This document shows positions 1,045-64,000 of a stretch of DNA of 64,000 nucleotides, one piece after another (position 1 is the stretch's first letter; every line of letters begins with the position of its first letter). The stretch lies in assembly GCF_964188315.1 (NCBI RefSeq), contig NC_135655.1, positions 82,522,001 through 82,586,000 on the forward strand, written 5' to 3'. This DNA is from Podarcis muralis (Eukaryota). Under the pieces are notes generated by a model. The model had not been told where the DNA came from and ran no database searches. It worked only from the letters and a program-made list of their open reading frames with translations. Made by a program: the position numbers and the translations under genes.

Positions 1045-2429
1045 GTTCAAATATGGAGGCTCGAACAAAATTCCCATTCATTCAGACTTAGTAATGGTTT
1101 ACAGGGCAGAATTCAAAGAGTCTATGAGAGCATTTCCTGTATTGTAAGATATATGTCATCTTAACCATTCATCCTCTACCCATGCGCCTTTTCCAACCCT
1201 AGCATCATACAATCTCTCATCCTACCACAGACCTTGGACATACTTACTCAACCCATTTTTCACTGTACATGTTAGAACCCTTCTTGTACTTAATATAAAG
1301 TGGCTTTTCAGTTTAACATTCAGATGTTTGGTGTTAGCAGGCTCAATGAAACCCCAAAGTTTTGAGGCCTGACCACAAAACTCAGAAGACAAGATAGGGA
1401 GGAATCTAAAGTGTACAGGTGCTTCTTTGCTTTCACAGCACTCACTCCATGAAGCTTGGAAATACAGGAGATGGTTGTGGCTTTTATTCGTCCTGTGCAT
1501 CTGCTCAGAGCAAATCCTTGATCCCAAACTCATTCCGGCTGAGTGAGTCAAGGCAGCCCATGATTCTCTTAGATCCACCTGGAGCAATCCAGTGTTTGTC
1601 AAAATGGAGAGGCAGTCAGGTGGTGAGGAGAGTGGGAAGTAGATGATGTAGTCAGACAATCCCACCGCCATTGTCTCCCTCTTCCCCCACTGCTTATTGC
1701 CAACCACATGTTTCATTAGGGCTTAATACCCTGGTTGAACCTGGGCTAGGAGGGGGGAGTGAGACAAGGTCACCAACCACACTGAGTTGTATAACCCTGA
1801 TTACACCTTCTCGGGTGGGGCAGGAAGACACACTGACCACATGTTCAATTAGAGCTTAAACCATTATCTTTTTAATTATGGCCTTTATAAAACTCCTGAT
1901 GAAATTTAGGGTCCAGGTTGCCTTGGGTTCAGATCAGTCTCAGCCAGATTGAAGCCTAATCATGATTCTTGAAATTATTTATTTCACAAAATTTATCTAA
2001 TGTTTCATAGTAAAAAAACAAAAACAAACCTCAAAGCAGTTTCTAAAACAATGGTTTAAAAAATCAGGATTGCCAAATTGGGCCAGGGCCAAATTATGAG
2101 TACTGTGCACAGCCCTAGTTTTTGACCCCATGGGCAATTGAAAAGAAAAACAATTTATCTTTCTTCAACTTAGGTGAGAAAGCAAAACTTGTTACTATTT
2201 AGGATCTATAAAAAGACACACTATTTCAGTCTAAATAACATGACACACTATATTTTTGCATTTCTTTCATTTTAAAATGTCATAAACTTGGGGAATAAAC
2301 ATAATTTTAAATAAGAAAAAAATTCAAAACATTTATATCAATACTGTACTCAGCTTTATTGACCAAAGCCATCTCCTTTACCATCTAACTACAGAGCGGA
2401 ATTATTCTATCTAAGTTTTGCATACTCTG

Positions 2430-3346: not shown

Positions 3347-4300
3347 ATGAATAAGGCAAATGACAGCTCAGTGACTGAATTTCTCTTGCTGGGCTTTTCT
3401 GTCTTTGGAAAGAAACCAACTCTACTTTTCCTGGGTTTCTCTCTTATATATGGCACGATCCTGGTCTTCAACCTCACCATCATGTCTGTCATCCTGTTTG
3501 ACCGGACTTTACACAGCCCCATGTACTTTCTACTCTTTGCATTCTCCGCATCAGAAACCTGCAGCACATTTGCCACCATCCCCAAGTTGCTGGTAACCCT
3601 GGTGACAGGCAGTCAATCCATTTCCTTTGTCGGGTGTGCCATGCAGATGTTTTCCTTTTCTGTATTTGGAGCAAACAACTGTTTCCTGCTTGCTGCTATG
3701 GCTTACGATCGGTATGTGGCAATATGCTGCCCACTTCAGTACCATATACTGATGAACAAAAGGGTTTGTACCCAAATGGTAGCGGCTTCATGTGTAACTG
3801 GATGTATCATAGCACTGAGTATTAATACCCTCATTTTTAGGTTACCCTTCTGTGGGTCAAACGGAATCAGGCATTTCTTTTGTGATTTCCTACCTGTGCT
3901 GAGGCTGGCTTGCATTGATGAATCGGTCTTACACTTGACTAACATTGCAATCATTATTTTCTGTGCCATTGTTTTGCTGGGCACCCTCATGGTGATGTTT
4001 GTCTCATACCATTACATCATTTCTGCCATCCTAAGGATCCCCTCCAGTGTAGGAAGGCAGAAAGCCTTCTCCACGTGTGCCTCCCACCTCACAGTGGTGA
4101 TAACACACTTTGGGTGTGCATCCTTTGTGTATTTGAGACCCAAGTCTTCCTCATCGCTAGATCAGGACACATTGATCTCAGTGACCTATGTCTTTCTAAC
4201 CCCTCTACTGAACCCTGTGATTTATACCTTAAGAAATAGGGACGTTAAAATAGCCATAAAGAACTTAGTTGTGCACTCATTCCGTTCTCAGAAACTGTGA
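3347..4300 (+). CDS. Olfactory receptor, class II, OR10-family-like, 317 aa
   Basis: [38 protein letters not shown] motifs; N-glycan sequon NDS; acceptor TTTTCCTTTCAG ends at 3324, 22 nt before ATG. Confidence 0.96.
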   Translation: MNKANDSSVTEFLLLGFSVFGKKPTLLFLGFSLIYGTILVFNLTIMSVILFDRTLHSPMYFLLFAFSASETCSTFATIPKLLVTLVTGSQSISFVGCAMQMFSFSVFGANNCFLLAAMAYDRYVAICCPLQYHILMNKRVCTQMVAASCVTGCIIALSINTLIFRLPFCGSNGIRHFFCDFLPVLRLACIDESVLHLTNIAIIIFCAIVLLGTLMVMFVSYHYIISAILRIPSSVGRQKAFSTCASHLTVVITHFGCASFVYLRPKSSSSLDQDTLISVTYVFLTPLLNPVIYTLRNRDVKIAIKNLVVHSFRSQKL

Positions 4301-7021: not shown

Positions 7022-7599
7022 AATTAGAGCTTAAACTGTTATGTTTTTAATTACAGCCTTTATAAAATTCCTGATGAAATTTAGGGTCCAGGTTGCCTTG
7101 GGTTCAGATCAGTCTCAGCCAGATTGAAGCCTAATCATGATTCTTGAAATTATTTATTTCACAAAATGTATCTAATGTTTCATAGTAAAAAAAACAAAAA
7201 CAAACCTCAAAGCAGTTTCTAAAACAATGGTTTAAAAAATCAGGATTGCCAAATTGGGCCATGGCCAGATTATGAGTACTGTGCACAGCCCTAGTTTTTA
7301 ACCCCATGGGCAATTGAAAAGAACGACAATTTATCTCTCTACAACTTAGGTGAGAAAGCAAAATTTATTACTGTTTAGGATCTATAAAAAGACACACCAT
7401 TTCAGTCTAAATAACATGACACATTATATTTTTGCATTTTTTCTTTTTAAAATGTCATAAACTTGGGGAATAAACATAATTTTAAAGAAGAAATAAATTC
7501 AAAACATTTATATCAATACTCAGCTTTATTGACCAAACCCTTCTCCTTTACCATCTAACTCCAGAGCGGAATTATTCTATCTAAGTTTTGCATACTCTG

Positions 7600-13524: not shown

Positions 13525-13775
13525 TAAATCTCACTATTTTCCATACTGAAAGAAGAGGAAGCAGTGAAGAGGTTAGTAGGATGGATTCTATAAAGTTCTC
13601 AGAAATGTAATGTTTCCACATTAATTTGATGGGGGCTGTTTTACAACCCCTTGCATACATCTGCAGCAGAAAAGGCATAGGCAAGCTTTTAAAATTGTGT
13701 GCCTGCTTTTTTAATTGATCCTGAGATATCCTTGAGTGTTAAGGTGGTGTAGTGTAGTGGTTAAGTACAGTATGG

Positions 13776-14024: not shown

Positions 14025-15530
14025 CTTAAGCTGCTATTGGGACAAAAATGGGATGGGAGGATTTTACTCATGTAACTTTAGGATAGGGAGAACTCTGTTA
14101 TTGTTACATTAATTTCAAATTGAAGCCTTTTTGTGTTTTGTTTTCTGGAACCTGTCCTGAAGCTTTATTGAATAGCATAATGAAAATCAGTATCAGTAAA
14201 TGCCACTTGGGGGAGTTAAATAATAGGGAGGGTGGGACAGGGTAACTTCAGTGATAACTGTGCCATTTAAAGAACACTGTCTTGTTTACCAGTTTGACGG
14301 GGGCTAATTACCCTTCAGCATTCTTTCCTCCCTTTTCTTATACTCACAACCAAGGTGATTTAAAAGAGAAAGATTCTTATCCCACCCTAAGTCTGAGCTG
14401 AATTGGTGATTCAAAATATAGAACCAGAAGGTGGTGATTATTGTGCATTAGTCAGCACTGAATGTTTTGTGGTGGAGCATTGAGGCGAGGCTTCCTTCTT
14501 TATCTGAGTTTCCAGAAATAAAACAACATCATCCCAGAACTCTTCTTTACTTGATCCCCATCCCAGTACACACACACCCTCCCCATGTAAAATGTTCTTA
14601 GTAACCTTATCACTGCCAAGCAGTGGGAAAATGTTTTTAAAAGGGAAAAAAGAGCTTGTAAGCCCTTCGGCAATGCCATAAAAGAAAAGAAAAAAACAAG
14701 GAATGAGCAGATCAGGATTAGAAAGGTCTGTAGACATGCAATCTAATCTGCATGTCTATGTTCCCATCCAGCCCATCAAATGTAGACCATGGAGTTTTGT
14801 CCCAAATTCTGGAACCGACCAAAATCCTCCCCCATCCTTACCTGTCACCCTGAAAATATTATTCTACTCCACCTCCCATCAGCTACAGCCAGCATGACTT
14901 ATGCTCAAGGATTATGAGAGATGTAGTCCAAAAGCATCTCGTAGCCTCCATTCCTGCTCTCCATCCCTGCTTTATGTGATGCTAGTTATTATGAGTAAAA
15001 AAGAAAAATCTCTTCCATGTGGCTTCTCACTACTAGCAAAATGGCCAAAACATACAGGCATGCATTACATACACCACCTTTCCATAGTTAAAACCATGCT
15101 CAATGTGGCTTACAGCATGGGGGGGGGGGGAATCATAATTACAAACATAACAAAGTAGTCTTGAACAGTAAATAAAACGTTTAAAAGTGCACAACTAAAA
15201 TATGCAATTTCCACATAAATCATTAGAATATCTAAAATAAAAATACAAAAATTAATATGAGTAACAGCAACAACCCCTCCAACCCCTACTAAACAATATC
15301 CCAGTCCAAGAGTCTCCTCAGCAGCCTCAGCTTTTGTAACTGGGGTCAAACAAAACAAGGAGGCCAAGTATTTACTGCTTAGATACACATCCCTGGAACA
15401 CAGTCAGAGCACTGACACGGCAACAAATTAGCATAACATGTAACTATTAGATAGGTTGGTATTATTCAGCTTTATTTACTTGCTTTATTCAATTATCATC
15501 TTTGCTCTCCAGGTTCTTGATGCTGAAAAG

Positions 15531-46632: not shown

Positions 46633-46858
46633 CAGTGCTTCCTCAGGTTACAGATGCTTCAGGTTATAGACTCCGCTTACTCAGAAATAGTACCTCGGGT
46701 TAAGAACTTTGATTCTGGATGAGAACAGAAATTGCAAGGTGACAGCGCAGCGGAAGCAGGAGGCGCCATTAGCTAAAGTGGTGCTTCAGGTTAAGAACAG
46801 TTTCAGGTTAAGAACGGACCTCCAGAATGAATTAAGTTCTTAACCTGAGGTACCAGTG
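46633..46858 (+). mobile_element. Tc1/mariner-type MITE (CAGTGGTACCT family)
   Basis: TA TSD; empty sites TACAGTATAAAGTCCC in paralogs near 34731 and 39736. Confidence 0.88.
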
Positions 46859-46989
46859 TATAAAGTCCCTTCTTACTGATAAGGGATTCAAGATTGTGAC
46901 ATGGATATTTGCCCATCACCCACTGATATCATGAGATCTGATGTCTGATCTTCAGCTCTTTGAATGAATACAGTTTGCCTATCACTAAA

Positions 46990-47375
46990 AAATGGCACTA
47001 CCTACCTAAAATGTTTGACTGCCTAAGTCTGCCAGTACAATAAAGCATCTACTTGCCTTCCTTGCTTTCCTTGTAAGTAAGAGTCTTTCCACAGTAAGAG
47101 AGGGCAATGTGAAGAATTTATGTCTCATCAGGAGAATGATGTCATGCCTCTTCTGAACTAAAATTCAATAAACATTGCCTCTGACTTGAGTCAAAGGGGC
47201 AAAGTACCGTATTATTTTTCCTTTGGCACAGCAGTGTGGGTGAGTGGTATTGAGACAAAGTGTCTATATTGGGACGAAAGTCTCTGAGGAATCCGGCAGT
47301 CCCTGAGTTGAAGTCTCAGAAGTGTGCAAATTCATTCTGCCAAAAGGTATTTTAAATGCAATGGCCCTGATCCAT
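46990..47375 (-). promoter_or_regulatory. Conserved upstream block for OR C
   Basis: ACTTGC at 47051-47056; GTCTCTGAGGA; TCCCTGAG. Confidence 0.5.
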
Positions 47376-47469
47376 GGAAGATGGGTTGTGCCCAAGTTCT
47401 CTTTGCTTTCAAAGGGACTCACACAGCTACTTTTCTCAGGAGAACAAAGTCTCTTCAAAGCAATTATTT

Positions 47470-47542
47470 GTTTTAATTTATTTTTAATTTTGTTGGAAGC
47501 CACACAGAGTGGAAACCCAGCTAGATGGGCGGGGTATAAATC

Positions 47543-47596
<54 letters not shown>
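47470..47596 (+). mobile_element. L2 3' end with (ATT)n tail (paralog of 40378)
   Basis: Same junction TTATTTGCTTATTTCA with the half-OR. Confidence 0.8.
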
Positions 47597-47597
<1 letters not shown>

Positions 47598-47600
47598 TGC

Positions 47601-48013
47601 TTATTTCATTATGTTTGTGTAGCATGATGGACTGCAGATAGCAACATACCGGTCATATGCTATCACTGCTATCAATAAAATGTGAGTGCCCACCACAGCA
47701 ATCAGAAATAAGAGTTCTAGCATACAACCAACAAATGGTATTGCCTTGTCCTCTGACAAGAAGACCTGGTGCATCTTTGACACAGTGACAGTTGGACAAA
47801 GGACATCTAAAAAAGATTAATTACTGAGGAAGAGATGCATGGGGGTCTGGAGGTGAACATCTGTCCCTTTGGCCAAGAGAACTGCCCCATTCCCTACCAG
47901 GGTAATCAAGTAGGTCAGCAGAATTGCCACTAAGAGGGAGATTTTCACTTCCGAAGATCAGGCAGCTCGGTGAGGTAAAAATCTTTTGCTTCTGTGATAT
48001 CGTCTTTCTCCAT
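47601..48013 (-). pseudogene. OR pseudogene, 5' half only (duplicate of 40537-40948)
   Basis: Same truncation at YTNIMK; [11 protein letters not shown] retained. Confidence 0.92.
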
Positions 48014-51525: not shown

Positions 51526-52461
51526 TCATGAAAAACTTTTCAGGTGAAATGCCTTGACCAAGGCCCTCTTAACATCCTTATTCCTCAGACTGTAGATCAT
51601 AGGGTTTAGCATAGGAGTAACGATCCCATACAACATGGAAACAATTCTGTCCTGTTTGGGCGAATAGCTGGAGGTGGGGCGAACATAGGTGGCAATGGTG
51701 GTCCCATAAAACAGGAAAACTACAGTCAGGTGGGAACCACAGGTGGAAAAGGCTTTGCGCCTTCCCTCAGCAGAGCGCATGCGCAGGATAGTAGAGATGA
51801 TATAGACATAAGAGATCAGAGTGACCAGGAAAGCACCACCTCCTAAAATGCCAGCCACAAGAAGGAGAACCAGTTCTGGGAGGTAGGTAGAGGAGCAAGA
51901 GGCAGCCATTAGTGGTGGGATATCGCAGTAATATTGGTTAATTTTGTAGGGCTCACAGAAGGATAATGTAAAGGTCAATGAGGTATGAATCATGGAATTG
52001 ATGAAGCCGGTTAGCCAGGTCCCTGCAGTCAGTTGAACACACAGCCTTTTCGTCATGATGTTTGTGTAGTGCAAGGGACTGCAGATAGCCACGTAGCGGT
52101 CATACGCCATCACTGAGAGCAAGAAGATTTCGGTGCCCACAGCATCAATCAGAAAGAAGAGTTGTAATACACAGCCCACAAATGATATTGTCTTGTTCTC
52201 CGACATAAAGACCTGGAGCATCTTTGGCACAGTCACTGTGGGGCAAAGGACATCCAGGAAAGACAGGCTGCTGATAAAGAAGTACATGGGGGTCTGGAGG
52301 TGACTATCTGTTGCTATTGCTGTGAGAATTGCCCCATTTCCTGCCAGAGTGATCAAGTAGGTCAACAGAATCACCACAAAGAGGGTGATTCGCACTTCTG
52401 GGAGATCAGAGAGTTCAGTGAAGTAAAAGTCTTTTGCCTCTGTGGTGTTGTCTTTCTGCAT
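51526..52461 (-). CDS. Olfactory receptor D, 311 aa
   Basis: Intact OR motifs; start MQKDNTT at 52461 aligns with paralog starts; acceptor at 52495-52496. Confidence 0.95.
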   Translation of the reverse strand: MQKDNTTEAKDFYFTELSDLPEVRITLFVVILLTYLITLAGNGAILTAIATDSHLQTPMYFFISSLSFLDVLCPTVTVPKMLQVFMSENKTISFVGCVLQLFFLIDAVGTEIFLLSVMAYDRYVAICSPLHYTNIMTKRLCVQLTAGTWLTGFINSMIHTSLTFTLSFCEPYKINQYYCDIPPLMAASCSSTYLPELVLLLVAGILGGGAFLVTLISYVYIISTILRMRSAEGRRKAFSTCGSHLTVVFLFYGTTIATYVRPTSSYSPKQDRIVSMLYGIVTPMLNPMIYSLRNKDVKRALVKAFHLKSFS

Positions 52462-52970
52462 TGTCCTCCTAATCAAACTGGTCAGCTAGAATGTCTAAAA
52501 TACAAAGAAAACAAAGCAAAAAATTTATAAGTACAAATGTTGGTTGAAGGACAATATACAATTGTTTAAGCATCTGACTTTTAATCGTAGATGGCCTGAT
52601 CCTGTTTGTTTCTGATGAATATCTCTCCCGCACATGTGGCCAAAACCTGTATATAGATTCCTTTGGTCAACAGAAAAAGCTTTGAAACCATTTTGAAATT
52701 AAGAATAAAGAAAACCTCATAAAATATAAAATTGAACACAAAATGGGAAAGCATGAGAGACAGCACTATAATCTCTTTTCAAAACCATTCAAGTCTTAAC
52801 CACAATATTACTGTCAGAAGTTACCATAGAAAGAATCATTTTCTTGTACCTACTAGGAGAGGGAGGCAGGCATAGTGGCCAACCCTGGCAAGGTGGAGGG
52901 GAGTGTCTTTCCCCCAGTTTCCCTCTCCTTTCCAGTTTTTTTTAAATGAATTTTTGATTAATTGACTGAC

Positions 52971-53420: not shown

Positions 53421-54229
53421 CACCGTATGATGCATGCCAACATCAGGGCTGTGTACCCTCCCCCACCTCTGCTACATTCTAGGGGCTTGTCAAGGGAATG
53501 AGAGGGCTCTGGATCAAATGGTTGCAAAACCTCCTCTCACCATCCCCAGCACAACCCTGGAACACTGGAGGCAGGGCAAAAAGCAGCAGCAGATCTTAAC
53601 ACTGATGCTGCAGGAAAACCTCCCTCATCAGATCTTCCTCTCCTATGGCGGACCTCTGTCTCCACCCATGGAAAGGAAGATCTGCAGAATCGTATGGCCT
53701 CAGGTCAGGCACCCCAAAGACTACAGGATTGCAGTCGTAATCGAAACGCCCTACCCCTCAAAATTATACTGCATATACTGCAGTGCACACATTGCATTAA
53801 TCCTGGATTAAATAATCCTGTTCAAAATATTAAGGAGTACCAGAATGATGGGTGGTAGTTAAACAGTAAAGCCTAGGAAACATTATATAGTACATGTTAA
53901 AAGAAGGAGATTAAGAACTTATCAAACCAAGAAAATGTGCTTATTGGCATATAACAACATTACTCTCCAAGTTTATATTTATCACTTAATAACAGGCATT
54001 TGTATGGCAAGACATTTATCTGCCAAAGCTGCAAAACAGTTTATTAAGAGTAAATGGATTTCAAACTTACCTAATGACAATATATTGCAAAGATGCTATA
54101 GGGTTGTTTTTTTTTTTCAAAACAATCACTAAACCTAAGGTATACATTTCCACATAGAAACTCAACTAAGATTATGGCTTCCGATCTCTTATATTTAGTT
54201 CACTGAATGAATATAATATGCCCATAACT

Positions 54230-54590
54230 GAAAAACAACACTATAGACCTAAAGTGTTTTGACTGCCTAAGATTGGAGACCCGGTAAACTGCATCCACGA
54301 GCCTTCCTTGCTTTCCTTGTGAACTGTAGAACCACAGCAACAAACAAGACAGTGAAGAATTTATGTGGAGTCAAGAAAAATGTTGTCACACAGCAATCTG
54401 AAGTAATGCCTAAGAAGCATTGCCTCTGTCAGAAGGACAACATCTCCCCCCGCCCAACTTTGCCACAGAGGTGGAGCGGGGGCGGAGGGGAGATGGCATA
54501 AACTCTATATTGGGACACGGGTCTCGGAGGAATGCTGCAGTTGCTGACTTGAAATCTCAGTTGTGCAAAAGCTCATTGGGCCAAATCCTG
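54230..54590 (-). promoter_or_regulatory. Diverged copy of the conserved upstream block for OR D
   Basis: GACCTAAAGTGTTTTGACTGCCTAAG...TATTGGGAC..GTCTCGGAGGA; GC donor degenerate (AAG|GCTCGT). Confidence 0.4.
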
Positions 54591-55398: not shown

Positions 55399-56658
55399 GG
55401 ATTTATTTATTTATTTTTAACATAATTTTCATTGAATTTTCCATATTTCATTTCATTTCATAATACATATCCAGAGCTTACATTATTACTCAAAAAGAGC
55501 AGCGACCTCCTTCCCTCCCACTTTTCTGACTTTCCTATACCTTTAACATATTTATCACATTTCCATAATCACTTCTTTACCTTATATAATCATTTAAAAA
55601 TCACACTCTCATTTGTAAATTAGCTCTTTCTTTCCTCATTACCAACTCCACAAATTCTACCATTTTTATCTGCCAGTCATCTAGGGTGGGGAGTTCTTGC
55701 TGTTTCCATCTCTGGGCCAGGAGGATTCTTACTGCCGTTGTGGCATACATCAATAAGTTTACATCTTTTTTGTGGATTTCCTCATCAGTTAACCCTAATA
55801 AGAATACTTCTGGTTTTTTACTGAAATTATATTTCAATACCTTTTTAAATTCATTATAGATAATGTCCCAGAAGGTTTTAACTTAAGGGCAAGTCCACCA
55901 CATACGTAGGAAGTTTCCTTCCTTCTCCCTACATTTCCAACATGATTTATCCTGGCCTCTATACATTTTGGCAAGTTTACTTGGTGTGATGTACCAACGA
56001 TACATCATCTTCATTAGATTTTCTTTAAGTGCCACACACGCTGTGAATTTGATTGTTTTATTCCACATTACCTCCCACCTCTCAAAATCGATGTTATGTG
56101 CCAGATCCTTTGCCCATCTTGCAAGTTGACCGTATTCTTCTATCTTTTCCATTGCTTCAATTGCACTGTTTGTTGGTTGTTCCAGCGTCAACACTACGTC
56201 ATCTGCAAAGGCTTTATATTTATACTCTTTGGAGCCAATTTCAATACCCTTTATTCCTTTTGTTTCATCCATTTTTTTCAACAAAACTTCTAAAGTTGTT
56301 ATGAATAATAGTGTCGATAACGGACACCCCTGCCTCGTCCCCTTCATTATCTCAATTCTTTCCGTAAGAGTATTATTAATTACAAGTGTAGCATATTGTT
56401 CAGAATAGATAGATTTAATTCCATTTATAAATTTCATTCCCATATCCTTGATTTCTAAATGCCTTTTCATGAAGTGCCAAGAAACATTATCAAATGCCTT
56501 CTCAGCATCCAGGAACATTAACACCGCTTGTTTATCCCTTCTGACATCCAAGAGTTCGATTATGTCAATGATGTTTCTAACATTATCTTTCAGTTGACAG
56601 CCAGGCACAAAGCTGGTTTGATTTTTCCCAATTCTCTCTCCTAATATTTGTTTATATC
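55399..56658 (-). mobile_element. L1-clade LINE ORF2 fragment with RT motifs, internal deletion and 3' tail
   Basis: FLDAEKAFD, GTRQGCPLS, YKAFADDVVL, CWKC..WWTC in ORF 55883-56608; (TAAA)n tail near 55400. Confidence 0.92.
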
Positions 56659-57020
56659 TGTCAGATAACTGCCATCGGCTCAGGGGCGAGAGGGGAAAAG
56701 GCGGATGGATTACAGCGAGCCCCCAAAGATCGTGGGAAGCAGCACTTCCTCAGCAGAGGAAGGAAGCCACGCCTCTAGAGGGGAGGAGATGCAGGGTTCG
56801 GAGGATGCAAGGCGGTGCCAGGACACCTTGCCTGAGCAAAGCGGGGAGGAGGGAGGTCCCCCGTTACCCAAGCCTTCCTTGCACAGTAGGCTTTCGCACA
56901 GAGAGGGGAGGCGCAGAATGGGGGTTAAGAAACTACTTTGCTGGGGAAGATTTAAGGACCGCCCACTCTCAGATTCTGCCAGTGAATGAGCAAGACATGG
57001 AATAGAGGCGCTCTGCATCA
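56659..57020 (+). mobile_element. Probable partial LTR (Gypsy-like), GC-rich
   Basis: Starts TGTCAGATAACTGCC exactly where the L1 fragment stops; no matching 3' end or TSD found. Confidence 0.35.
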
Positions 57021-57143
57021 AATGACACAGTGCACACACACCATTTGAATGGGAATGCCCATCAACTTTGTGGGGGTCTGGCCCCCTCAAATATTTTATT
57101 ATGGGGGCCAAAGCCCCCACTGCCCCTAGGAGTTGACTCTTAT

Positions 57144-57760
57144 GTGCTCTGGTAACCTTTAGGCTAGATTACTGCAATGTGTTATATATGAGGCTGCCTC
57201 TGAAGACAGTTCTGAAACTTCAGCTCCTGCAGTGTTCAGTGGCCAGAGGCCAGGTTGCTCGCCAGGACAATATGGTTTGAACATATAACACCAATCCTGT
57301 CCTGATTGCACTGCCTGCTAATGGGCTCAAATCAAAGTGCTGGTTTTGACCTATACAGCCTTAAATGGCTCAGGACTGTAATACCTCAAGGACTGCCTCT
57401 CCCCATATGAACCAACCTGGACCTGAGATCATCATCTGAGGTCCTTCTTTGTGTGCCTCCTCCACAAGATGTCTTGAGGGTGGCAACTGAGAATGGGCCT
57501 TTTCTGTGGTGGCTCCCCGTTTGTGGAATACTCTCTCCAGGGAGAGTAGATATTGTTAGGTGCCAGGTGAAAACATTCCTCTTCTCCCAAACTTTCTCCC
57601 AAACCTTTGGCTAATTAGACTATTAAACCTATTAAACTGTGAGAGGTATTGTTTAGTTTGTTATTGTGCTATGTATTTTTGTATTTTTATACTGTAAACC
57701 ACAATGTGATTCACAGATGAAGGAAAGTATAGAAATTTAATTAATAAATAATAAATAAAT
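57144..57760 (+). mobile_element. Older L2 subfamily 3' fragment
   Basis: CTAGATTACTGCAATG (LDYCN), AAAGTGCTGGTTTTGACCTAT, (TAAA)n tail. Confidence 0.75.
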
Positions 57761-59199
57761 GCATTCGGTTAAGCCTGCCCAGCCCCACTCCCTATTATTT
57801 TTAAGGGGAAAGGGTTATATGAACCATTCCAATAGACATTCCATTGCTGGCTTGCTAGCAGTGGCATTGCAAGGGGAAACCCAAGCCCTTTGCCCTTTGT
57901 GTTGGGCATTGCATCTCCTATGACTTTGCCTCCCTTTTAAAATTATTCTGTGTACCTGTTATTACATTACATTGTATTGTATTATATTATATCATATTAT
58001 ATTATATTAATTATTTACATTGCTTACAGGGCAGCTGGGCACATTGCAAAGTGCCTTACAATTGAGCCACTCATCATCTTAATTTGTCCAGAAGCATATA
58101 TGCGTCTAAATTAGCATAAGCAAAACTTATGTCATGTGATAATCTCTAATGAAAAATGGAACATGGTTTTTTTGTGGGGGATCTTTTAAAACAGTTTTGG
58201 CCCAATTAAACAGCAGGCGGCCACACACCCCGGCCATCCTGATTGGTCAGCCAGGGGGTGTGACACGACTGGGAGTCCCAGTGATGTGGGCGGCATCCCT
58301 CCGCCCACAGCCAGGTCACCGGGAGGCCCACAGGCCCTCCCGCAATGCTGCCCCCCGGGGAAGGGGAGCAGACTTTTTGAAACTTACATAGGTGGCATCT
58401 TTCCCCCTTGCAAATATCTCACATGATACCAGGGGCAACATCAGCCTGCTGGAGGGGAGTTTACATACATATATGGTGGTTTTGCAAATCTGTTCACCCA
58501 TGTTAGGCTTTGGCATTCAAAGAATTGAGTTTAATATACAAAGCGGGCCTGCAAACTTCCCCTCAGCTTACTTTACTTGGAATAAAGGACATGTCTGCTC
58601 CACCAATTGTTCATAAAGTACTTTTAACGTTCCTCCTTGTGGTGGCATGTATGGAAATACCCATGCAATGGCACACTACCTTGGGCTTGAACTTTGAAGC
58701 ATAGTACTCCAGAGCATGGACAAGAGCCCTGGCTGAGAAGACATAACAGATTCGTGTGACCAAAGGGAATTCTAACCCCCATCAGTTCTATGAAGTGTGG
58801 TAACCATTTTTGGATTACATGCATCAAGAAGACTGTGCTTATAAACCTCTAGAGAACTCATGGCAATATGTGGGCGGGGGTGGGGGGGGAATTGGAGTGA
58901 ACTATAAGAATTTGATTTGATATTTTTAAGAAAAGCGATTGATGTGTTGGGAGCTGAGTTGTTTTCTGTGTAATGTGAAAAATGAAAATTATTTAAAAAA
59001 ACAAACAAACATGCATAGAGGGACCATCCTGGTGAGAATATGAACTAGCCCATTTTATCTGGTGTGATTAGCTTACAGGGACAGAACTATGCTGTGGGAA
59101 AGTGGGGGGGGGGCAGATCTGGGCAAGATAAGGAGGGGGGGATCGTGGGTCATTTTTGTCATGATACACAGGCATGTCAAGGTGTGATGTCCAAACCAG

Positions 59200-59700
59200 C
59201 ATTCGTTCCAGAGAACCTGCATCTGCCTTTCTCTAATTTAAAGTAACGTCTTTGAAACAGAGTTGAATTTTAACAAGGCACTGAGGAGCCAATTTGCCAG
59301 AACTTTCAGACTTCTTGCATAAGTTACATAATGGCAGGCTGGCAAGCGATAACTTTTTAATCATGCCCTCGAGGGCTTATTAGTATAGCTGGGAGTTGAC
59401 TCGGTTGCCGGAGATATGAGTCAATTACCTTAAACTGATCACCTCAAATCCAGAGGCAGAAGCACTCAAAGGGGAAAACCCCTGGAGTTTTCATTTTTGT
59501 TTTCTTGCCAGAGTTGGGACCATTAGGCTGAAGCAGTGCACACAATCTCCATGGTGCATGTCTTCGTTCCCAAGAAAGGAGAAAGAATTGGCTACAGAAA
59601 ATTCCCTAGGAGAGATTGGTAAGGGGAAGAAAAACTACTTGTATGATCTCCAACTCTGAGACTACACAGAACATTAATCATGCACTTCTATCTTCTATTC
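59200..59700. promoter_or_regulatory. Candidate OR cluster enhancer (homeodomain-EBF composite, H/P-element-like)
   Basis: ATAACTTTTTAATCA-TG-CCCTCGAGGG at 59349-59375 plus CAATTA, CATTAG, TTAATCA and EBF-like CCCTGGAG, TCCCTAGGAG. Confidence 0.55.
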
Positions 59701-60150
59701 TATTATACATGACAGAGTAAATCACCTCTGAGTATGAGTACCATTCTTGTTAGCCACACACCCCCATCTTCCCAGTCTGGGCCTGCCATTTGTCCTATCC
59801 CCTGCTGACCCCACAGGGAAAAATCACAGAACATAGAGTTTAAACTGAGAGTTGCTTATAGAAAGCAGCTATATGCAAATCAAAGCATGGTGTATTTGCT
59901 AGAACACAGCAGAAGTTATGGGAAAGGGACATTAATTCATCCTACTGTAAGCTGAAACTTCAGCCATGAGTTCCTCAGACTCAGAACAAAGCCCACCCCA
60001 ATGGCAAACATTTCCCCATTCCTGTAGGAAAGGCATTCTCCATCCACAGGAAATTTGAGTTGTGGCAAGGCCGCCCTACCATTACGCAGACTGATGTAGG
60101 CCATATTCACACCATATATTTAAAACAGTATGATATCACTTTAAAGAGTC

Positions 60151-60932
60151 ATAATAATAATAATAATTTATTATTTATTCCCCAGCCACTCTGGGCGACT
60201 TCCAACAGAATATTAAAATACAATAGTCTATTAAACATTAAAAGCTTCCCTAAAGAGGGCTGCCTTCAGATGTCTTCTAAAAGTCAGGTACAGTCATACC
60301 TTGAGTTGAATGTGCTTCAGGTTGAGCGCTTTCGGGTTGCGCTCCGCAGTAACTCGGAAGTAATGGAGTGTGTTACTTCTGGGTTTCAACCACTTGCGCA
60401 TGCGCAGACGCTCAAAATGACGTCACACGCATACGCAGAAGCAGCAAAACACGACCCACACACGTGCAGACACTCCGGCACGTCTTACGTTCCGTTCAAG
60501 ATGCGAACGGGGCTCCAGAACAGATCCCGTTCGCATCCTGAGGTACCACTGTAGTTGTTTTTCTCTTTGACATGCCACTACCAAGAAGGCCCTCTGCCTG
60601 GTTCCCTGTAACTTGGCTTCTCGCAGCAAGGGAACTGCCAGGAGGCCCTCGGTGCTGGACCTCAGTGTCTGGGCTGAACGATGCGGGTGGAGATGCTCCT
60701 TCAGGTATACTGGATCGAGGCCATTTGGGGCTTTAAAGGTCAGCACCAACACTTTGAATTGTGCTCGGAAACATACTGGGAGCCAATGTAGGTCTTTCAA
60801 GACCGGTGTTATATGGTCTCGGCGGCTGCTCCCAGGCCCCAGTCTAGTTGCCACATTCTGGATTAGTTGTAGTTTTCGGGTCACCTTCAAAGGTAGCCCC
60901 ACATAGAGCACATTGCAGTAGTCCAAGCAAGA
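60151..60932 (-). mobile_element. L2 LINE 3' fragment interrupted by a mariner MITE
   Basis: DYCNVLYVGLPLKVTRKLQLIQN...HITPVLKDLHWLP peptide; (ATT)n tail at 60151. Confidence 0.9.
60291..60551. mobile_element. Tc1/mariner-type MITE nested in L2
   Basis: TA TSD restoring L2 GTCAGGTA|GTTG; termini CAGTCATACCT / AGGTACCACTG; CpG-rich interior. Confidence 0.85.
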
Positions 60933-61392
60933 CTACTTGGCTTCCCCCAAAGAATCCTGGGAACTGTAATTTGTTATGGGTGCTGAGAGATACTAAGAGA
61001 ACCCTATTCCCCATAAAGACCTACAATTTCCAGAGCTACCTGTGAAGAGGGATTGATAAACCACGCTGGGAATTGTAGCTTGGGGGGGGGTAGGGGGTCT
61101 CCTAATAAGGCTTAACAAGCTTAACAAACTACAGCTCCCCAAATTATTTAAGGGAAGCCTTGATTTCATAGTGCATTAAATCTTTGATGTGAATGTGGCT
61201 GTAGTCACCTCAGATCGCTGATATTTGGCAGGGGGAAGGAGTTGTGGCAAAGTGTTGGAGGCTGAAGCCTGTGTGTCTGCCCTGCCTTGAACAAGCCTGC
61301 TGCCCTCTGGTAAACAGAAAATGAATTCCCCTTGCCAGGATGGCCCATCCAGTTTCACCGCCTGAAAAAAGATCTCTATGAGATCCCACGAG

Positions 61393-62129: not shown

Positions 62130-62204
62130 TCCTTTTTAGCACCATTGGAGGTGTCTTCATGTTTTATAGGCCCATGCTTTAAGCCAAGGTTGGTGGTAGT
62201 AGTG

Positions 62205-62340
62205 GACTGTGGCCTTCTTGATGTTGTTGGGACTCCCAACTCCCATCAGCCTCAGCCAGCATGGCCAATGGTTAGGGATTGATGGGAGCTTGTAGCCCAG
62301 CAACATTTGGAGGGCCACAAGTACCCCATCCCTGGCTTAG
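62205..62340. mobile_element. Degenerate foldback MITE related to 6884-7021
   Basis: GATGTTGTTGGGACTCCCAACTCCCATCA / TGATGGGAGCTTGTAGCCCAGCAACAT. Confidence 0.5.
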
Positions 62341-62407
62341 ATCATTTGGAGTTGCCTGGCTCAAGTTCCTAAGGCCCTATGCTGTTTCTCAAGTCTCCAT
62401 CATTACA

Positions 62408-62638
62408 CAGTGGTACCTCGGGTTACAGACACTTCAGGTTACAGACGCTTCAGGTTACAGACTTCGCTAACCCAGAAATAGTACCTCAGGTCAAGAACTT
62501 TGCTTCAGGATGAGAACAGAAATCGCGCAGCAGCAGTGGGAGGCCCCATTAGCTAAAGTGGTACCTCAGGTTAAGAACAGTTTCAGGTTAAGAATGGACC
62601 ACCAGAACGGATTAAGTTCTTAACCTGAGGTACTGCTG
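62408..62638 (+). mobile_element. Tc1/mariner-type MITE (CAGTGGTACCT family)
   Basis: CAGTGGTACCTCGGGTTA / TAACCTGAGGTACTGCTG-TA. Confidence 0.88.
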
Positions 62639-64000
62639 TACAAGGTGCTTTACAGTGCAACATAAGCAACAGAGACATGTCCCTGACCCAAATTTTGTAA
62701 GAAGGAAAAGGAGAGGATGAGTGGAGCGCCTGGAGGAAAGAGGGTCAAAAATAATAGGAGACAAATATGTTTAAGTGCAGCTGCACCTATTTAGCTCAGG
62801 TAAAGAGTGAAACCAAAAGGGCATCACAGAACAAAAAGGCTTTGAAAAAAGAAGCTTGGAGGAACAACTATTGTATATCACTAGCTTAGAGTTCAGAAAC
62901 AATAGCTTGAATCTCCTATATTGTGAATAACATTGCGCAGAGAGCCTATAGATGGATCTTTGGTGACATCTAGCGGCTAGTTTAAAAAATGTATTCATTC
63001 AGTCTTTTCAAACCAAAGGAATGGGAAGTTTTTCAATTCTAGGCCCGTTTAGATTTTAAAGAATCAAGTACCAGGTAAAGAAACTATGTGGAGGTTATAC
63101 ACGACTGTATTCTGCTTCTCTATCCATTACTAATAAAGGATGCAATACCCCACATTACTGTTGATGAGTGCTGACAATCCACATGCTGCTGTGCTTGCCA
63201 CTCAACCATACCCTGGTCACGAGTTAGGCTTCCTCTTGCCTTCAGACTTTTTGTTAAGTATCTTTCCGTAAGAACAACCCCTCAAATTGATAATCCCGTC
63301 ATCACACACACACACAACTGATGCAATAATTTTAGATTAGATGGCACAGCTTCTGTTGGCTTCTGGCTCTTTATTAGCTGAACTTCCAATGGTTATGCAT
63401 TTTTCAGGGCCATATCTCCATATGCAAAAGGTGGAGACACATAGAAAGTTGGTGGTGCATGCAGATTGCTGCATGTCATTAGCTGGAGCTATTACTGATG
63501 CTGCCCATTCGCACAGTGGTTGCATACTACCATTATCAGCTTATGAAAAAAGGTTTGCATCTTTGACAAGTCACCACTTTTTAACATCAAATCATAAGAT
63601 CTCAGGGCGGCTCACAAGATAAAATACAAGGTAAAAACATTATTGGCTGAGAACCAAGTTTTGAAATTTAAAAAAAAACCAGACTCATCAGAATGGTATG
63701 CAGAACAAGCTGGTGCCTCTGTGGTGTATCTTCCAATTGCAGGTTGTATGAAATAGTGTTCCAGGTTCTGCAACAAGACCCAACTTCTGTTTATCCATAG
63801 CTGGGGGGCAGGGACGACCTGGTATAAGACAGAGATCATCTCAATAACAAGGCTTTTAATGCAAGATAAATAATGCATTGCACATCATTTTGAATTGGTC
63901 GTATTAAACAAACAAACCAGATACTTGTGGATGAAACTAGCAGAAGATGTCAAAAGTATTTGAAATATTAATTAGTGAGTTATTGATCTGAAACATAAGA

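What the first reader, a model, noticed from the sequence alone, without database searches (positions are those of the whole stretch)
59349..59383. H/P-element-like homeodomain-EBF composite: candidate reptile OR-choice enhancer
Seen: ATAACTTTTTAATCA TG CCCTCGAGGG CTTATTAG. Knowledge (from memory): mouse OR enhancers H and P share the 13-mer AACTTTTTAATGA, the H-derived 21-mer is ACATAACTTTTTAATGAGTCT, and Greek-island enhancers carry a closely spaced Lhx2-Ebf composite. The lizard sequence matches the 13-mer at 12/13 and the 21-mer at 14 of 15 consecutive positions. It is followed after 2 nt by an EBF-type CCCNNGRG inside the palindrome GCCCTCGAGGGC, with a second TAAT on the opposite strand, giving HD-EBF-HD symmetry. 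It lies ~7 kb upstream of the last OR, not at a promoter. Inference: an amniote-conserved OR-choice enhancer for this cluster.
Basis: partly seen in the sequence, partly recalled or inferred. Interest (0 to 1): 0.85.

Follow-up and report, generated by a model that had tools for sequence, protein, structure and literature searches.

The report
Conserved lizard smell-receptor regulatory element
The flagged motif sits in the middle of the best-conserved non-coding stretch of this wall-lizard smell-receptor gene cluster, so it is probably a real switch for those genes and most likely an enhancer, but nothing shows it is shared with mammals and no activity has been measured.

Summary
The sequence is exactly as described. 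Against published mouse sequences it matches the H/P 13-mer at 12/13 and the x21 21-mer at 14/15. The motif alone is weak evidence. A 12/13 hit arises by chance in about 30% of such windows. The mismatch makes TAATCA, which is not the TAATKR core. The Ebf-like site is degenerate, and its palindrome exists only in Podarcis.

The new evidence is evolutionary. The window is Podarcis muralis. The motif lies at the centre of a single-copy, non-coding block (~59150-59900). This block is the most conserved 500-bp window of 265 compared with Lacerta, P. raffonei and Zootoca: divergence 0.025, against 0.069 for non-coding DNA and 0.042 for OR coding sequence. In the 35-nt motif only the two central bases of GCCC-NN-GAGGGC vary.

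The block lies between two head-to-head OR genes, 6.9 and ~9.9 kb from their start codons. Each gene has its own proximal upstream block. The best reading is a Greek-Island-like OR enhancer (~0.5). A distal or alternative promoter is the main rival, because the same T-rich homeodomain motif marks OR promoters in this window.

"Amniote-conserved" is unsupported. First readers of this scan flagged similar homeodomain + O/E modules elsewhere in this genome (s1-152691, s1-152824).

The parts
59150..59900 (.). Conserved non-coding element (CNE), core 59201-59700. It is single-copy and has no ORF.
   Evidence: It is the most conserved 500-bp window of 265 (pooled divergence 0.025 vs 0.069 non-coding and 0.042 OR CDS; binomial p 6e-15, not corrected for phylogeny). 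Four-way identical columns are 86-98% per 50 bp inside the block vs 74-86% just to the left. One contig's depth covers it in DNA runs X1 and X3, while 60156-61023 reaches ~1e6. There are 12-13 stops in every frame and no paralogue in the window. No Rfam match.
59349..59363 (+). x21/H/P-type extended homeodomain site ATAACTTTTTAATCA (13-mer at 59351-59363)
   Evidence: 12/13 to AACTTTTTAATGA and 14/15 to the x21 21-mer. Invariant in Lacerta agilis, P. raffonei and Zootoca. The core is TAATCA, not TAATKR.
59365..59376 (.). Ebf/O-E-like site GCCC-NN-GAGGGC. It is palindromic only in Podarcis.
   Evidence: It starts 2 nt after TAATCA. The Y4-N-R4 run is in the same register as the mouse Sfaktiria composite oligo. 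Only 59369-59370 vary: TC in Podarcis, GT in Lacerta, GC in Zootoca. It is 2 mismatches from YCCCNNGGGR.
59366..59382 (-). Minus-strand match TAATAAGCCCTCGAGGG to the published degenerate Lhx2-Ebf composite pattern
   Evidence: It fits WWAHDRRBHHHHNDRDD from PMC11643329. The pattern is very loose: 263 matches in the window, 15 of them with a TAAT core.
59329..59334 (+). Homeodomain site TAATGG (TAATKR)
   Evidence: Invariant in four lacertids.
59417..59427 (-). Homeodomain site TAATTG (59422-59427, minus strand), next to an AP-1-like TGAGTCA at 59417-59423
   Evidence: Invariant in four lacertids.
59479..59487 (-). O/E-like site CTCCAGGGG (YYYCARRRR); on the + strand it reads CCCCTGGAG
   Evidence: In Lacerta the two central bases differ (CCCCATGAG).
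59515..59525 (-). Homeodomain site TAATGG abutting TCCCAA
   Evidence: Invariant.
59618..59623 (+). Splice-donor-like GGTAAG inside the CNE. It matters only for the promoter/first-exon rival.
   Evidence: Conserved in all four species. No RNA reads here.
51526..52476 (-). Left-hand neighbour: an OR5V1-like gene, first of a tandem minus-strand array. The motif is 6.9 kb upstream of its ATG.
53891..54585 (-). Upstream block of the OR5V1-like subfamily, probably its promoter/5' exon region
   Evidence: It is shared with paralogue upstream regions and with Rhineura. It is less conserved than the CNE (0.044-0.047) and has 1 TAATKR and no O/E-like site.
60363..60371 (+). Homologue of the first coding exon (ATG) of P. 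raffonei OR1052-like isoform X4. It lies inside a high-copy repeat.
   Evidence: Repeat depth.
63931..63956 (+). Small 5' coding exon (MKLAEDVK + GT donor) that matches isoform X1 of the right-hand OR

Best explanation
The motif is the core of a ~600-750-bp, single-copy, selectively constrained cis-regulatory element. It lies in the head-to-head gap between an OR5V1-like array (minus strand) and an OR1052-like gene (plus strand) in Podarcis muralis. It most likely works as a distal olfactory-neuron enhancer of the mouse H/P/Greek-Island kind. In that reading, LIM-homeodomain (Lhx2-type) proteins bind the T-rich extended TAAT site and the other TAATKR sites. Ebf/O-E proteins bind the adjacent GCCC-NN-GAG site and the other O/E-like sites. 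The occupied element then raises the probability that a nearby OR promoter is chosen.

Shown here: the sequence, its conservation, that it is single-copy, its position and its motif content. Inferred: which factors bind it, that it acts as an enhancer, and which genes it serves.
For: 1. It is the most conserved 500-bp window of 265 across 26 kb against three other lacertid genomes. It is more conserved than OR coding sequence.
2. Across the 35-nt motif only the two central 'NN' bases of the Ebf-like site vary among genera.
3. It is single-copy and not a transposon, although a ~1e6-depth repeat starts at about 60032.
4. It is non-coding, has no Rfam family and is not an OR relic.
5. The homeodomain-to-Y4NR4 spacing is identical to the mouse Sfaktiria composite, and the first 11 nt (AACTTTTTAAT) are identical. 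The homeodomain site is within 3 bp of the O/E-like site, which is how the Greek-Island motif is described.
6. The block has 3 TAATKR plus 4 YYYCARRRR sites per 500 bp. Only two loci in 1270 sliding windows reach that.
7. It lies 6.9 and ~9.9 kb from the flanking ATGs. Recognisable OR promoter-like cassettes here lie 0.6-3.9 kb upstream.
8. Both neighbours have their own proximal upstream blocks: 53891-54585, and a TAATGA + TATA-like + GT-donor cassette 1.4 kb upstream of the P. raffonei OR1052-like ATG.
9. No TATA box follows the homeodomain site in the CNE, unlike those cassettes.
10. The CNE is retained in Zootoca even though an inversion/inverted duplication rearranges the genes to its right.
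Against: - There are no functional data: no chromatin accessibility, factor binding or reporter assay.
- Both TAAT sites flanking the Ebf-like site fail TAATKR (TAATCA, TAATAA).
- The Ebf-like site is degenerate.
- The motif alone is near chance once the number of windows read is counted.
- The same T-rich homeodomain motif followed by GCC occurs in OR promoter-like cassettes in this window. Motif density does not separate enhancer from promoter: the other top-scoring locus, ~47.2 kb, lies in an OR upstream block.
- A P. raffonei isoform starts coding about 1 kb downstream of the motif, about 460 bp beyond the CNE's right edge.
- Conservation is shown only within Lacertidae, where background divergence is only about 7%.
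- The central NN variation also fits CpG hypermutability.
Confidence: 0.5

Rival explanations
1. The block is a distal or alternative promoter, possibly with a short non-coding first exon, for the plus-strand OR1052-like gene ~9.9 kb to the right. Alternatively it is a former OR promoter kept in use. The homeodomain site would then act as in ordinary OR promoters.
For: The core aligns with OR promoter-like cassettes at 1868 and 7044 and with the P. raffonei cassette: [GT]TAT-N-TTTTTAAT-N-A-N-GCC. In mouse the 13-mer also occurs in the P3 promoter. A conserved donor-like GGTAAG lies at 59618. The first coding exon of P. raffonei isoform X4 lies at ~60363, with the other alternative 5' exons further right. 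First-reader notes from this scan describe homeodomain + O/E + TATA + short-exon cassettes nearby (unchecked).
Against: It lies at 9.9 kb, against 0.6-3.9 kb for the recognisable cassettes. There is no TATA box where the cassettes have one. The OR1052-like gene has its own cassette at -1.4 kb. The X4 exon lies in a repeat with ~1e5-1e6 k-mer depth and has a weak GTTACT donor, so that model may be spurious. No reads cover 57800-60091 in four RNA runs, but their tissue is unknown. The block is more conserved and longer than the subfamily promoter block. In Zootoca the region to its right is inverted, and no ortholog appeared in the homolog search or in the 90% protein cluster.
Confidence: 0.25
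2. It is a constrained element with a function unrelated to OR choice, for example an enhancer or boundary for another gene or tissue, or part of an unannotated non-coding RNA. The homeodomain/Ebf-like strings would then be incidental.
For: Conservation by itself says nothing about tissue or target. TAAT-type and Y/R-run motifs are common: 152 TAATKR and 123 YYYCARRRR in the window. An invariant AP-1 site (TGAGTCA) and NFI half-sites are also present.
Against: Every gene seen in the window and in the fetched flanking loci is an OR. The rare extended-homeodomain + in-register Ebf-like combination falls at the centre of the most conserved ~1% of the window, which is unlikely if the two were unrelated. 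No Rfam hit and no RNA reads.
Confidence: 0.17
3. The block has no function. The motif is chance, and the low divergence reflects local mutation-rate variation or alignment bias.
For: The motif alone is expected about once or twice over the windows read so far. Conservation depth is shallow, within Lacertidae only.
Against: The 2.7-fold drop in divergence is sharply bounded on both sides, is seen in all three comparisons and is lower than coding sequence.
Confidence: 0.06

Closest known systems
Mouse H and P elements and the H-derived 21-bp 'x21' extended homeodomain site (AACTTTTTAATGA; ACATAACTTTTTAATGAGTCT)
   Same: 12/13 and 14/15 identity. [quoted passage not shown]
   Different: The core is TAATCA, not TAATGA. 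x21 has no proximal O/E site, whereas this one does. There is no orthology to mouse. Activity is untested.
Greek-Island Lhx2/Ebf composite motif (Monahan et al. 2017), e.g. the Sfaktiria composite AACTTTTTAATTGATCTCCAAGGAAT
   Same: The first 11 nt are identical and the register is the same: TAAT + 4 nt, then four pyrimidines, N, four purines. The minus strand fits the published degenerate pattern.
   Different: The Lhx2 half-site is non-canonical on both strands. The HOMER composite score could not be computed. Here two TAAT sites share one Ebf-like site. Binding is unknown.
Mouse J element (class I OR enhancer, conserved from platypus to human)
   Same: A conserved core a few hundred bp long with several homeodomain sites, one O/E-like site and an extended-homeodomain-like site.
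   Different: The ORs here are OR5V1/OR1052/OR1038-like, not the mouse class I cluster genes. The J-specific AAACTTTTC motif was not examined here. Conservation is shown only within one lizard family.
OR promoter cassettes (homeodomain + O/E + TATA, short 5' exon)
   Same: They share the T-rich TAAT motif followed by GCC.
   Different: The CNE has no TATA box. It is 3-10 times further from the ATG, and it is larger and more conserved.

Membership tests
H/P/x21 extended homeodomain site | 13-mer AACTTTTTAATGA (or 21-mer ACATAACTTTTTAATGAGTCT) | tested here: inconclusive
   12/13 and 14/15 identity. The mismatch is the G of TAATGA. One-mismatch hits occur about 0.3 times per window by chance.
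H/P/x21 extended homeodomain site | Homeodomain core TAATKR (TAATGA/TAATTG) as used for Lhx2-type sites | tested here: not met
   The core is TAATCA, and the opposite-strand site is TAATAA. TAATCA is listed among conserved homeodomain sites of TAAR enhancer TE1.
H/P/x21 extended homeodomain site | Raises the probability of OR choice when multimerised | not testable with these tools
   Needs transgenic animals.
Greek-Island Lhx2/Ebf composite motif | Homeodomain site within ~3 bp of an O/E-like site at a fixed spacing | tested here: met
   There are 2 nt between TAATCA and GCCC. The register is identical to the Sfaktiria composite. The minus strand fits the fuzznuc pattern.
Greek-Island Lhx2/Ebf composite motif | HOMER composite score >=10 (stringent) or >=5 (permissive) | not testable with these tools
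   The matrix is not in the text or held supplements.
Greek-Island Lhx2/Ebf composite motif | O/E-like half matching YCCCNNGGGR or YYYCARRRR | tested here: inconclusive
   GCCCTCGAGG is 2 mismatches from YCCCNNGGGR and does not fit YYYCARRRR. It does fit the Y4-N-R4 form said to be tolerated in composites.
OR enhancer / Greek Island (whole element) | Intergenic, inside an OR gene cluster | tested here: met
   It lies between an OR5V1-like gene (51526-52476, minus strand) and an OR1052-like gene on the plus strand, ~9.9 kb to the right by the P. raffonei loci.
OR enhancer / Greek Island (whole element) | Non-repetitive and conserved across related species | tested here: met
   Single-copy. Most conserved window across four lacertids. 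Nothing found beyond Lacertidae, but orthologous intervals were not secured.
OR enhancer / Greek Island (whole element) | Lhx2 + Ebf (+ Ldb1) co-binding and open chromatin in mature olfactory neurons | not testable with these tools
   No lizard olfactory ATAC or ChIP data were reachable.
OR enhancer / Greek Island (whole element) | Not a promoter; acts at a distance on several ORs | tested here: inconclusive
   It is far from both ATGs, and both genes have proximal blocks. However, an alternative first coding exon is modelled ~1 kb downstream of the motif in P. raffonei.
OR promoter cassette | Homeodomain site followed by a TATA box, then a short exon and donor, 0.6-4 kb upstream of the ATG | tested here: not met
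   No TATA box at the aligned position. Distances are 6.9 and 9.9 kb. A donor-like site at 59618 is the only promoter-type feature. No RNA reads.

The most novel reading that the evidence does not exclude
Squamate OR clusters use Greek-Island-type enhancers built on the same grammar as in mouse: a T-rich 'AACTTTTTAAT' extended homeodomain site fused in fixed register to an Ebf-type site. That grammar, and perhaps hub-based singular OR choice, would then date back at least to the amniote ancestor, even though the individual enhancers are not orthologous.
Probability: 0.3. Interest if true: 0.75.

Novelty: new member of a known kind. Interest (0 to 1): 0.55.

Why it matters
OR-choice enhancers have been defined functionally in mouse, and mouse elements work in zebrafish neurons. 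In the searchable library I found no paper describing an OR enhancer in any reptile or bird. A sharply bounded, single-copy, constrained element whose core combines the x21-type site with a composite-type Ebf site gives a concrete ~500-bp test object. It could show whether the Lhx2/Ebf enhancer logic of singular OR expression operates in sauropsids. It could also show whether the conserved T-rich flank of the homeodomain site has a function of its own. If the block proves to be a distal promoter, the result is ordinary.

Tried and rejected
1. Deep conservation. I fetched OR-anchored loci from Rhineura, Hemicordylus, Elgaria, Python (two loci) and Pogona, about 115 kb in total. I searched them with blastn and with an nhmmer profile of the lacertid block and found no hit. 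tblastn showed that gene order around the anchors differs. In Rhineura the subfamily upstream block already sits 8-9 kb out. These negatives are therefore uninformative. The last look-up, a Rhineura OR1052-like isoform, was not on record.

2. A 42-bp Python match (78.6%, E 0.017) did not extend and lacks the motif, so I rejected it as chance.

3. RNA evidence. No indexed RNA run holds the block. Four raw RNA runs give zero depth over 57800-60091. The tissues are unknown, so this neither supports nor excludes a promoter.

4. The HOMER composite matrix could not be obtained. I used the degenerate published pattern, which proved too loose to mean much (263 hits).

5. OR pseudogene relic. One marginal tblastn hit (E 0.025) disappeared in a rerun at an E-value cutoff of 0.05.

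6. Structured RNA. No Rfam hit at E<=1.

7. 'HD-EBF-HD palindromic symmetry' as a conserved design. I rejected this because the palindrome is Podarcis-specific.

Full report
**Observation**

Window 59349-59383 reads ATAACTTTTTAATCATGCCCTCGAGGGCTTATTAG, exactly as reported.

- AACTTTTTAATGA is the 'extended homeodomain' site of the mouse H and P elements and the P3 promoter (PMC7804114 and PMC5638857).
- ACATAACTTTTTAATGAGTCT is the 21-bp x21 element (PMC8213819).

The matches are 12/13 and 14/15 as stated. Taken alone the motif is weak evidence:
- A 13-mer hit with <=1 mismatch turns up in 29 of 100 shuffles, or 0.305 per window under a Markov model.
- The single mismatch changes TAATGA to TAATCA, which lies outside the TAATKR definition used for these sites.
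- The Ebf-like part is two mismatches from YCCCNNGGGR.
- Requiring an in-register Y4-N-R4 run, or CCCNNGRG within 5 nt, lowers the expectation to about 0.0025 per window. This rests on one simulated event in 400 windows, so it is rough. Over the ~730 windows of this genome already read, that still means roughly one to two chance cases.

**Identity and context**

The OR at 51526-52461 (minus strand) is 99% identical to a Podarcis muralis OR5V1-like protein. A P. muralis RefSeq protein of the neighbouring gene lies on a contig of the same length as the window's own. The window is therefore from the wall lizard.

I fetched orthologous loci from Lacerta agilis (L001), Zootoca vivipara (L002, L006) and P. 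raffonei (L003, L011). In P. raffonei the order is:
- OR5V1-like (minus strand);
- the block studied here;
- OR1052-like (plus strand), with its main exon ~9.9 kb to the right;
- OR1038-like (plus strand).

The motif therefore lies in a head-to-head gap, 6.9 kb from one ATG and ~9.9 kb from the other.

**The main new result: conservation**

The motif is at the centre of a conserved non-coding element.
- In a four-way alignment, 59150-59900 has 86-98% identical columns per 50 bp. Just to the left the figure is 74-86%.
- Over 26 kb (38-64 kb), 59201-59700 is the most conserved of 265 alignable 500-bp windows. Pooled divergence is 0.025, against a non-coding mean of 0.069 and 0.042 for OR coding sequence. 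That is 38 mismatches in 1500 aligned positions (binomial p 6e-15, not corrected for shared ancestry).
- Within the 35-nt motif the only differences among genera are the two central bases of GCCC-NN-GAGGGC: TC in Podarcis, GT in Lacerta, GC in Zootoca.

This pattern is what an Ebf-type CCCNNG-G site would allow. It is also what CpG decay at unconstrained positions would produce. It does show that the palindrome, and hence the strict 'HD-EBF-HD symmetry', is specific to Podarcis.

**What the block is not**

- It is not a repeat. In DNA runs X1 and X3 a single contig's depth covers 59164-60031, whereas 60156-61023 reaches ~1e6.
- It has no paralogue in the window and 12-13 stop codons in every frame.
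- It has no Rfam match.
- It shows no credible OR-coding remnant.
- Four RNA runs of unknown tissue give zero depth across 57800-60091.

**Motif content**

- The block holds three TAATKR sites (59329 +, 59422 -, 59520 -) and four YYYCARRRR O/E-like sites (59206 +, 59249 -, 59479 -, 59568 +). Only two loci among 1270 sliding windows reach 3 + 4.
- Compared with the mouse Sfaktiria composite oligo (PMC5608512, supplementary file 7), the lizard site shares the first 11 nt (AACTTTTTAAT). It also has the same register: TAAT + 4 nt, four pyrimidines, N, four purines.
- On the minus strand, TAATAAGCCCTCGAGGG fits the degenerate composite pattern used by the same laboratory (PMC11643329). That pattern is too loose to carry weight: 263 hits in the window, 15 of them with a TAAT core.
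- The Greek-Island motif is described as a homeodomain site within 3 bp of an O/E-like site, whereas x21 lacks a proximal O/E site. The lizard site combines both features.

**Enhancer or promoter?**

A lead from first-reader notes elsewhere in this genome made me compare the block with OR promoters in the window. The T-rich homeodomain motif recurs 1.47 kb upstream of the ORs at 3347 and 8517. There it reads ...TTAT-N-TTTTTAATTA-NN-GCCTTTATAAAA..., that is, a homeodomain site followed by a TATA box. Related forms lie 0.6-3.9 kb upstream of other ORs. The CNE core aligns to these cassettes through the GCC, but it carries TCGAGGGC where they have the TATA box. So the motif is not specific to enhancers, just as in mouse, where it also occurs in the P3 promoter.

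Points for a promoter reading:
- the similarity to those cassettes;
- a conserved donor-like GGTAAG at 59618;
- a P. raffonei isoform (X4) of the OR1052-like gene whose first coding exon maps to window 60363.

Points against a promoter reading:
- That X4 exon lies in a repeat of ~1e5-1e6 k-mer depth and has a weak donor.
- The OR1052-like gene has its own TAATGA + TATA-like + GT-donor cassette 1.4 kb upstream of its ATG.
- The OR5V1-like subfamily has its own upstream block at 53891-54585, shared with paralogues and with Rhineura.
- The CNE is 3-10 times further from either ATG than any recognisable cassette, and it is longer and more conserved than the subfamily promoter block.
- In Zootoca the genes to the right are inverted or duplicated, yet the block is retained. 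No ortholog of the OR1052-like gene appeared in the homolog search or in the 90% protein cluster.

I put a distal enhancer at about 0.5, a distal or alternative promoter at about 0.25, another constrained function at about 0.17, and no function at about 0.06.

**Depth of conservation**

The claim 'amniote-conserved' is not supported. No alignable copy was found in loci around OR5V1-like or OR1038-like orthologues of Rhineura, Hemicordylus, Elgaria, Python and Pogona. Gene order around those anchors differs, so the orthologous interval was probably not sampled. This is absence of evidence. The resemblance to the mouse elements is one of binding-site grammar, not of orthologous sequence.

**Comparison and novelty**

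The closest known systems are the mouse H/P elements and x21 site, the Greek-Island Lhx2/Ebf composite, and the J element. I found no reptile or bird OR enhancer in the searchable literature. Mouse OR enhancers do drive expression in zebrafish olfactory neurons, so the trans-acting factors are old.

If the block is active, it would be a new member of a known kind in a new clade. First readers of this scan have flagged similar homeodomain + O/E modules on other DNA of this genome (for example s1-152691 and s1-152824). I did not check those.

Noticed in passing
window 1850-1960 and 7030-7140 (+): Two paralogous promoter-like cassettes lie 1.47 kb upstream of the ORs at 3347 and 8517. Each has a T-rich extended homeodomain site (TTTTTAATTA) followed 5-6 nt later by a TATA box (TTTATAAAA).
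   Followed up: partly
window 13709-13740 (+): CTTTTTTAATTGATCCTGAGATA lies 1.75 kb upstream of the OR at 15456. It is a TAATTGA site with a Y4-N-purine run in the Greek-Island composite register, but at a promoter-like distance.
   Followed up: no
window 63931-63956 (+) and 60363-60371 (+): These are small upstream coding exons that match alternative N-termini (MKLAEDVK..., MER/MEC...) of the P. raffonei OR1052-like isoforms X1 and X4. All isoforms join an internal acceptor just before GNCTVV in the main exon.
   Followed up: partly
L006 9638-12819 and 18319-20939 (Zootoca vivipara): Two protein-identical OR1038-like copies in inverted orientation flank the conserved block. Each is bordered by a repeat like window 62407-62640. 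This is a recent inverted duplication or inversion relative to Podarcis, or an assembly artefact.
   Followed up: partly
window 60032-61050 and 62193-62765: These are very high-copy interspersed repeats (summed k-mer depth up to ~5e6). They are transcribed as parts of many RNAs. The ORF at 60423-60926 (minus strand, DYCNVLYVGLP...) has no Pfam match.
   Followed up: partly
window 55883-56608 (-): A LINE reverse-transcriptase fragment (Pfam RVT_1, E 5e-17). The ORF list alone could mislead a reader into taking it for the 'last OR'.
   Followed up: yes
window 53891-54585: An upstream block of the OR5V1-like subfamily. It is shared with the paralogue at 46276-47344, with paralogue upstream regions in Lacerta, and at 73-85% with Rhineura. 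It is probably the promoter/5' exon region.
   Followed up: partly
window 56951-57500: The second most conserved non-coding stretch in the gap (divergence ~0.038 in two species). Not examined.
   Followed up: no
window 47151-47650: The only other locus with >=3 TAATKR and >=4 O/E-like sites per 500 bp. It lies in the upstream block of the OR at 44642-45583 and ends in an (ATT)n microsatellite.
   Followed up: no
L010 12748-12787 (Python bivittatus): A 42-bp match (78.6%) to window 59206-59247, between two OR genes. It does not extend and I judged it chance.
   Followed up: yes
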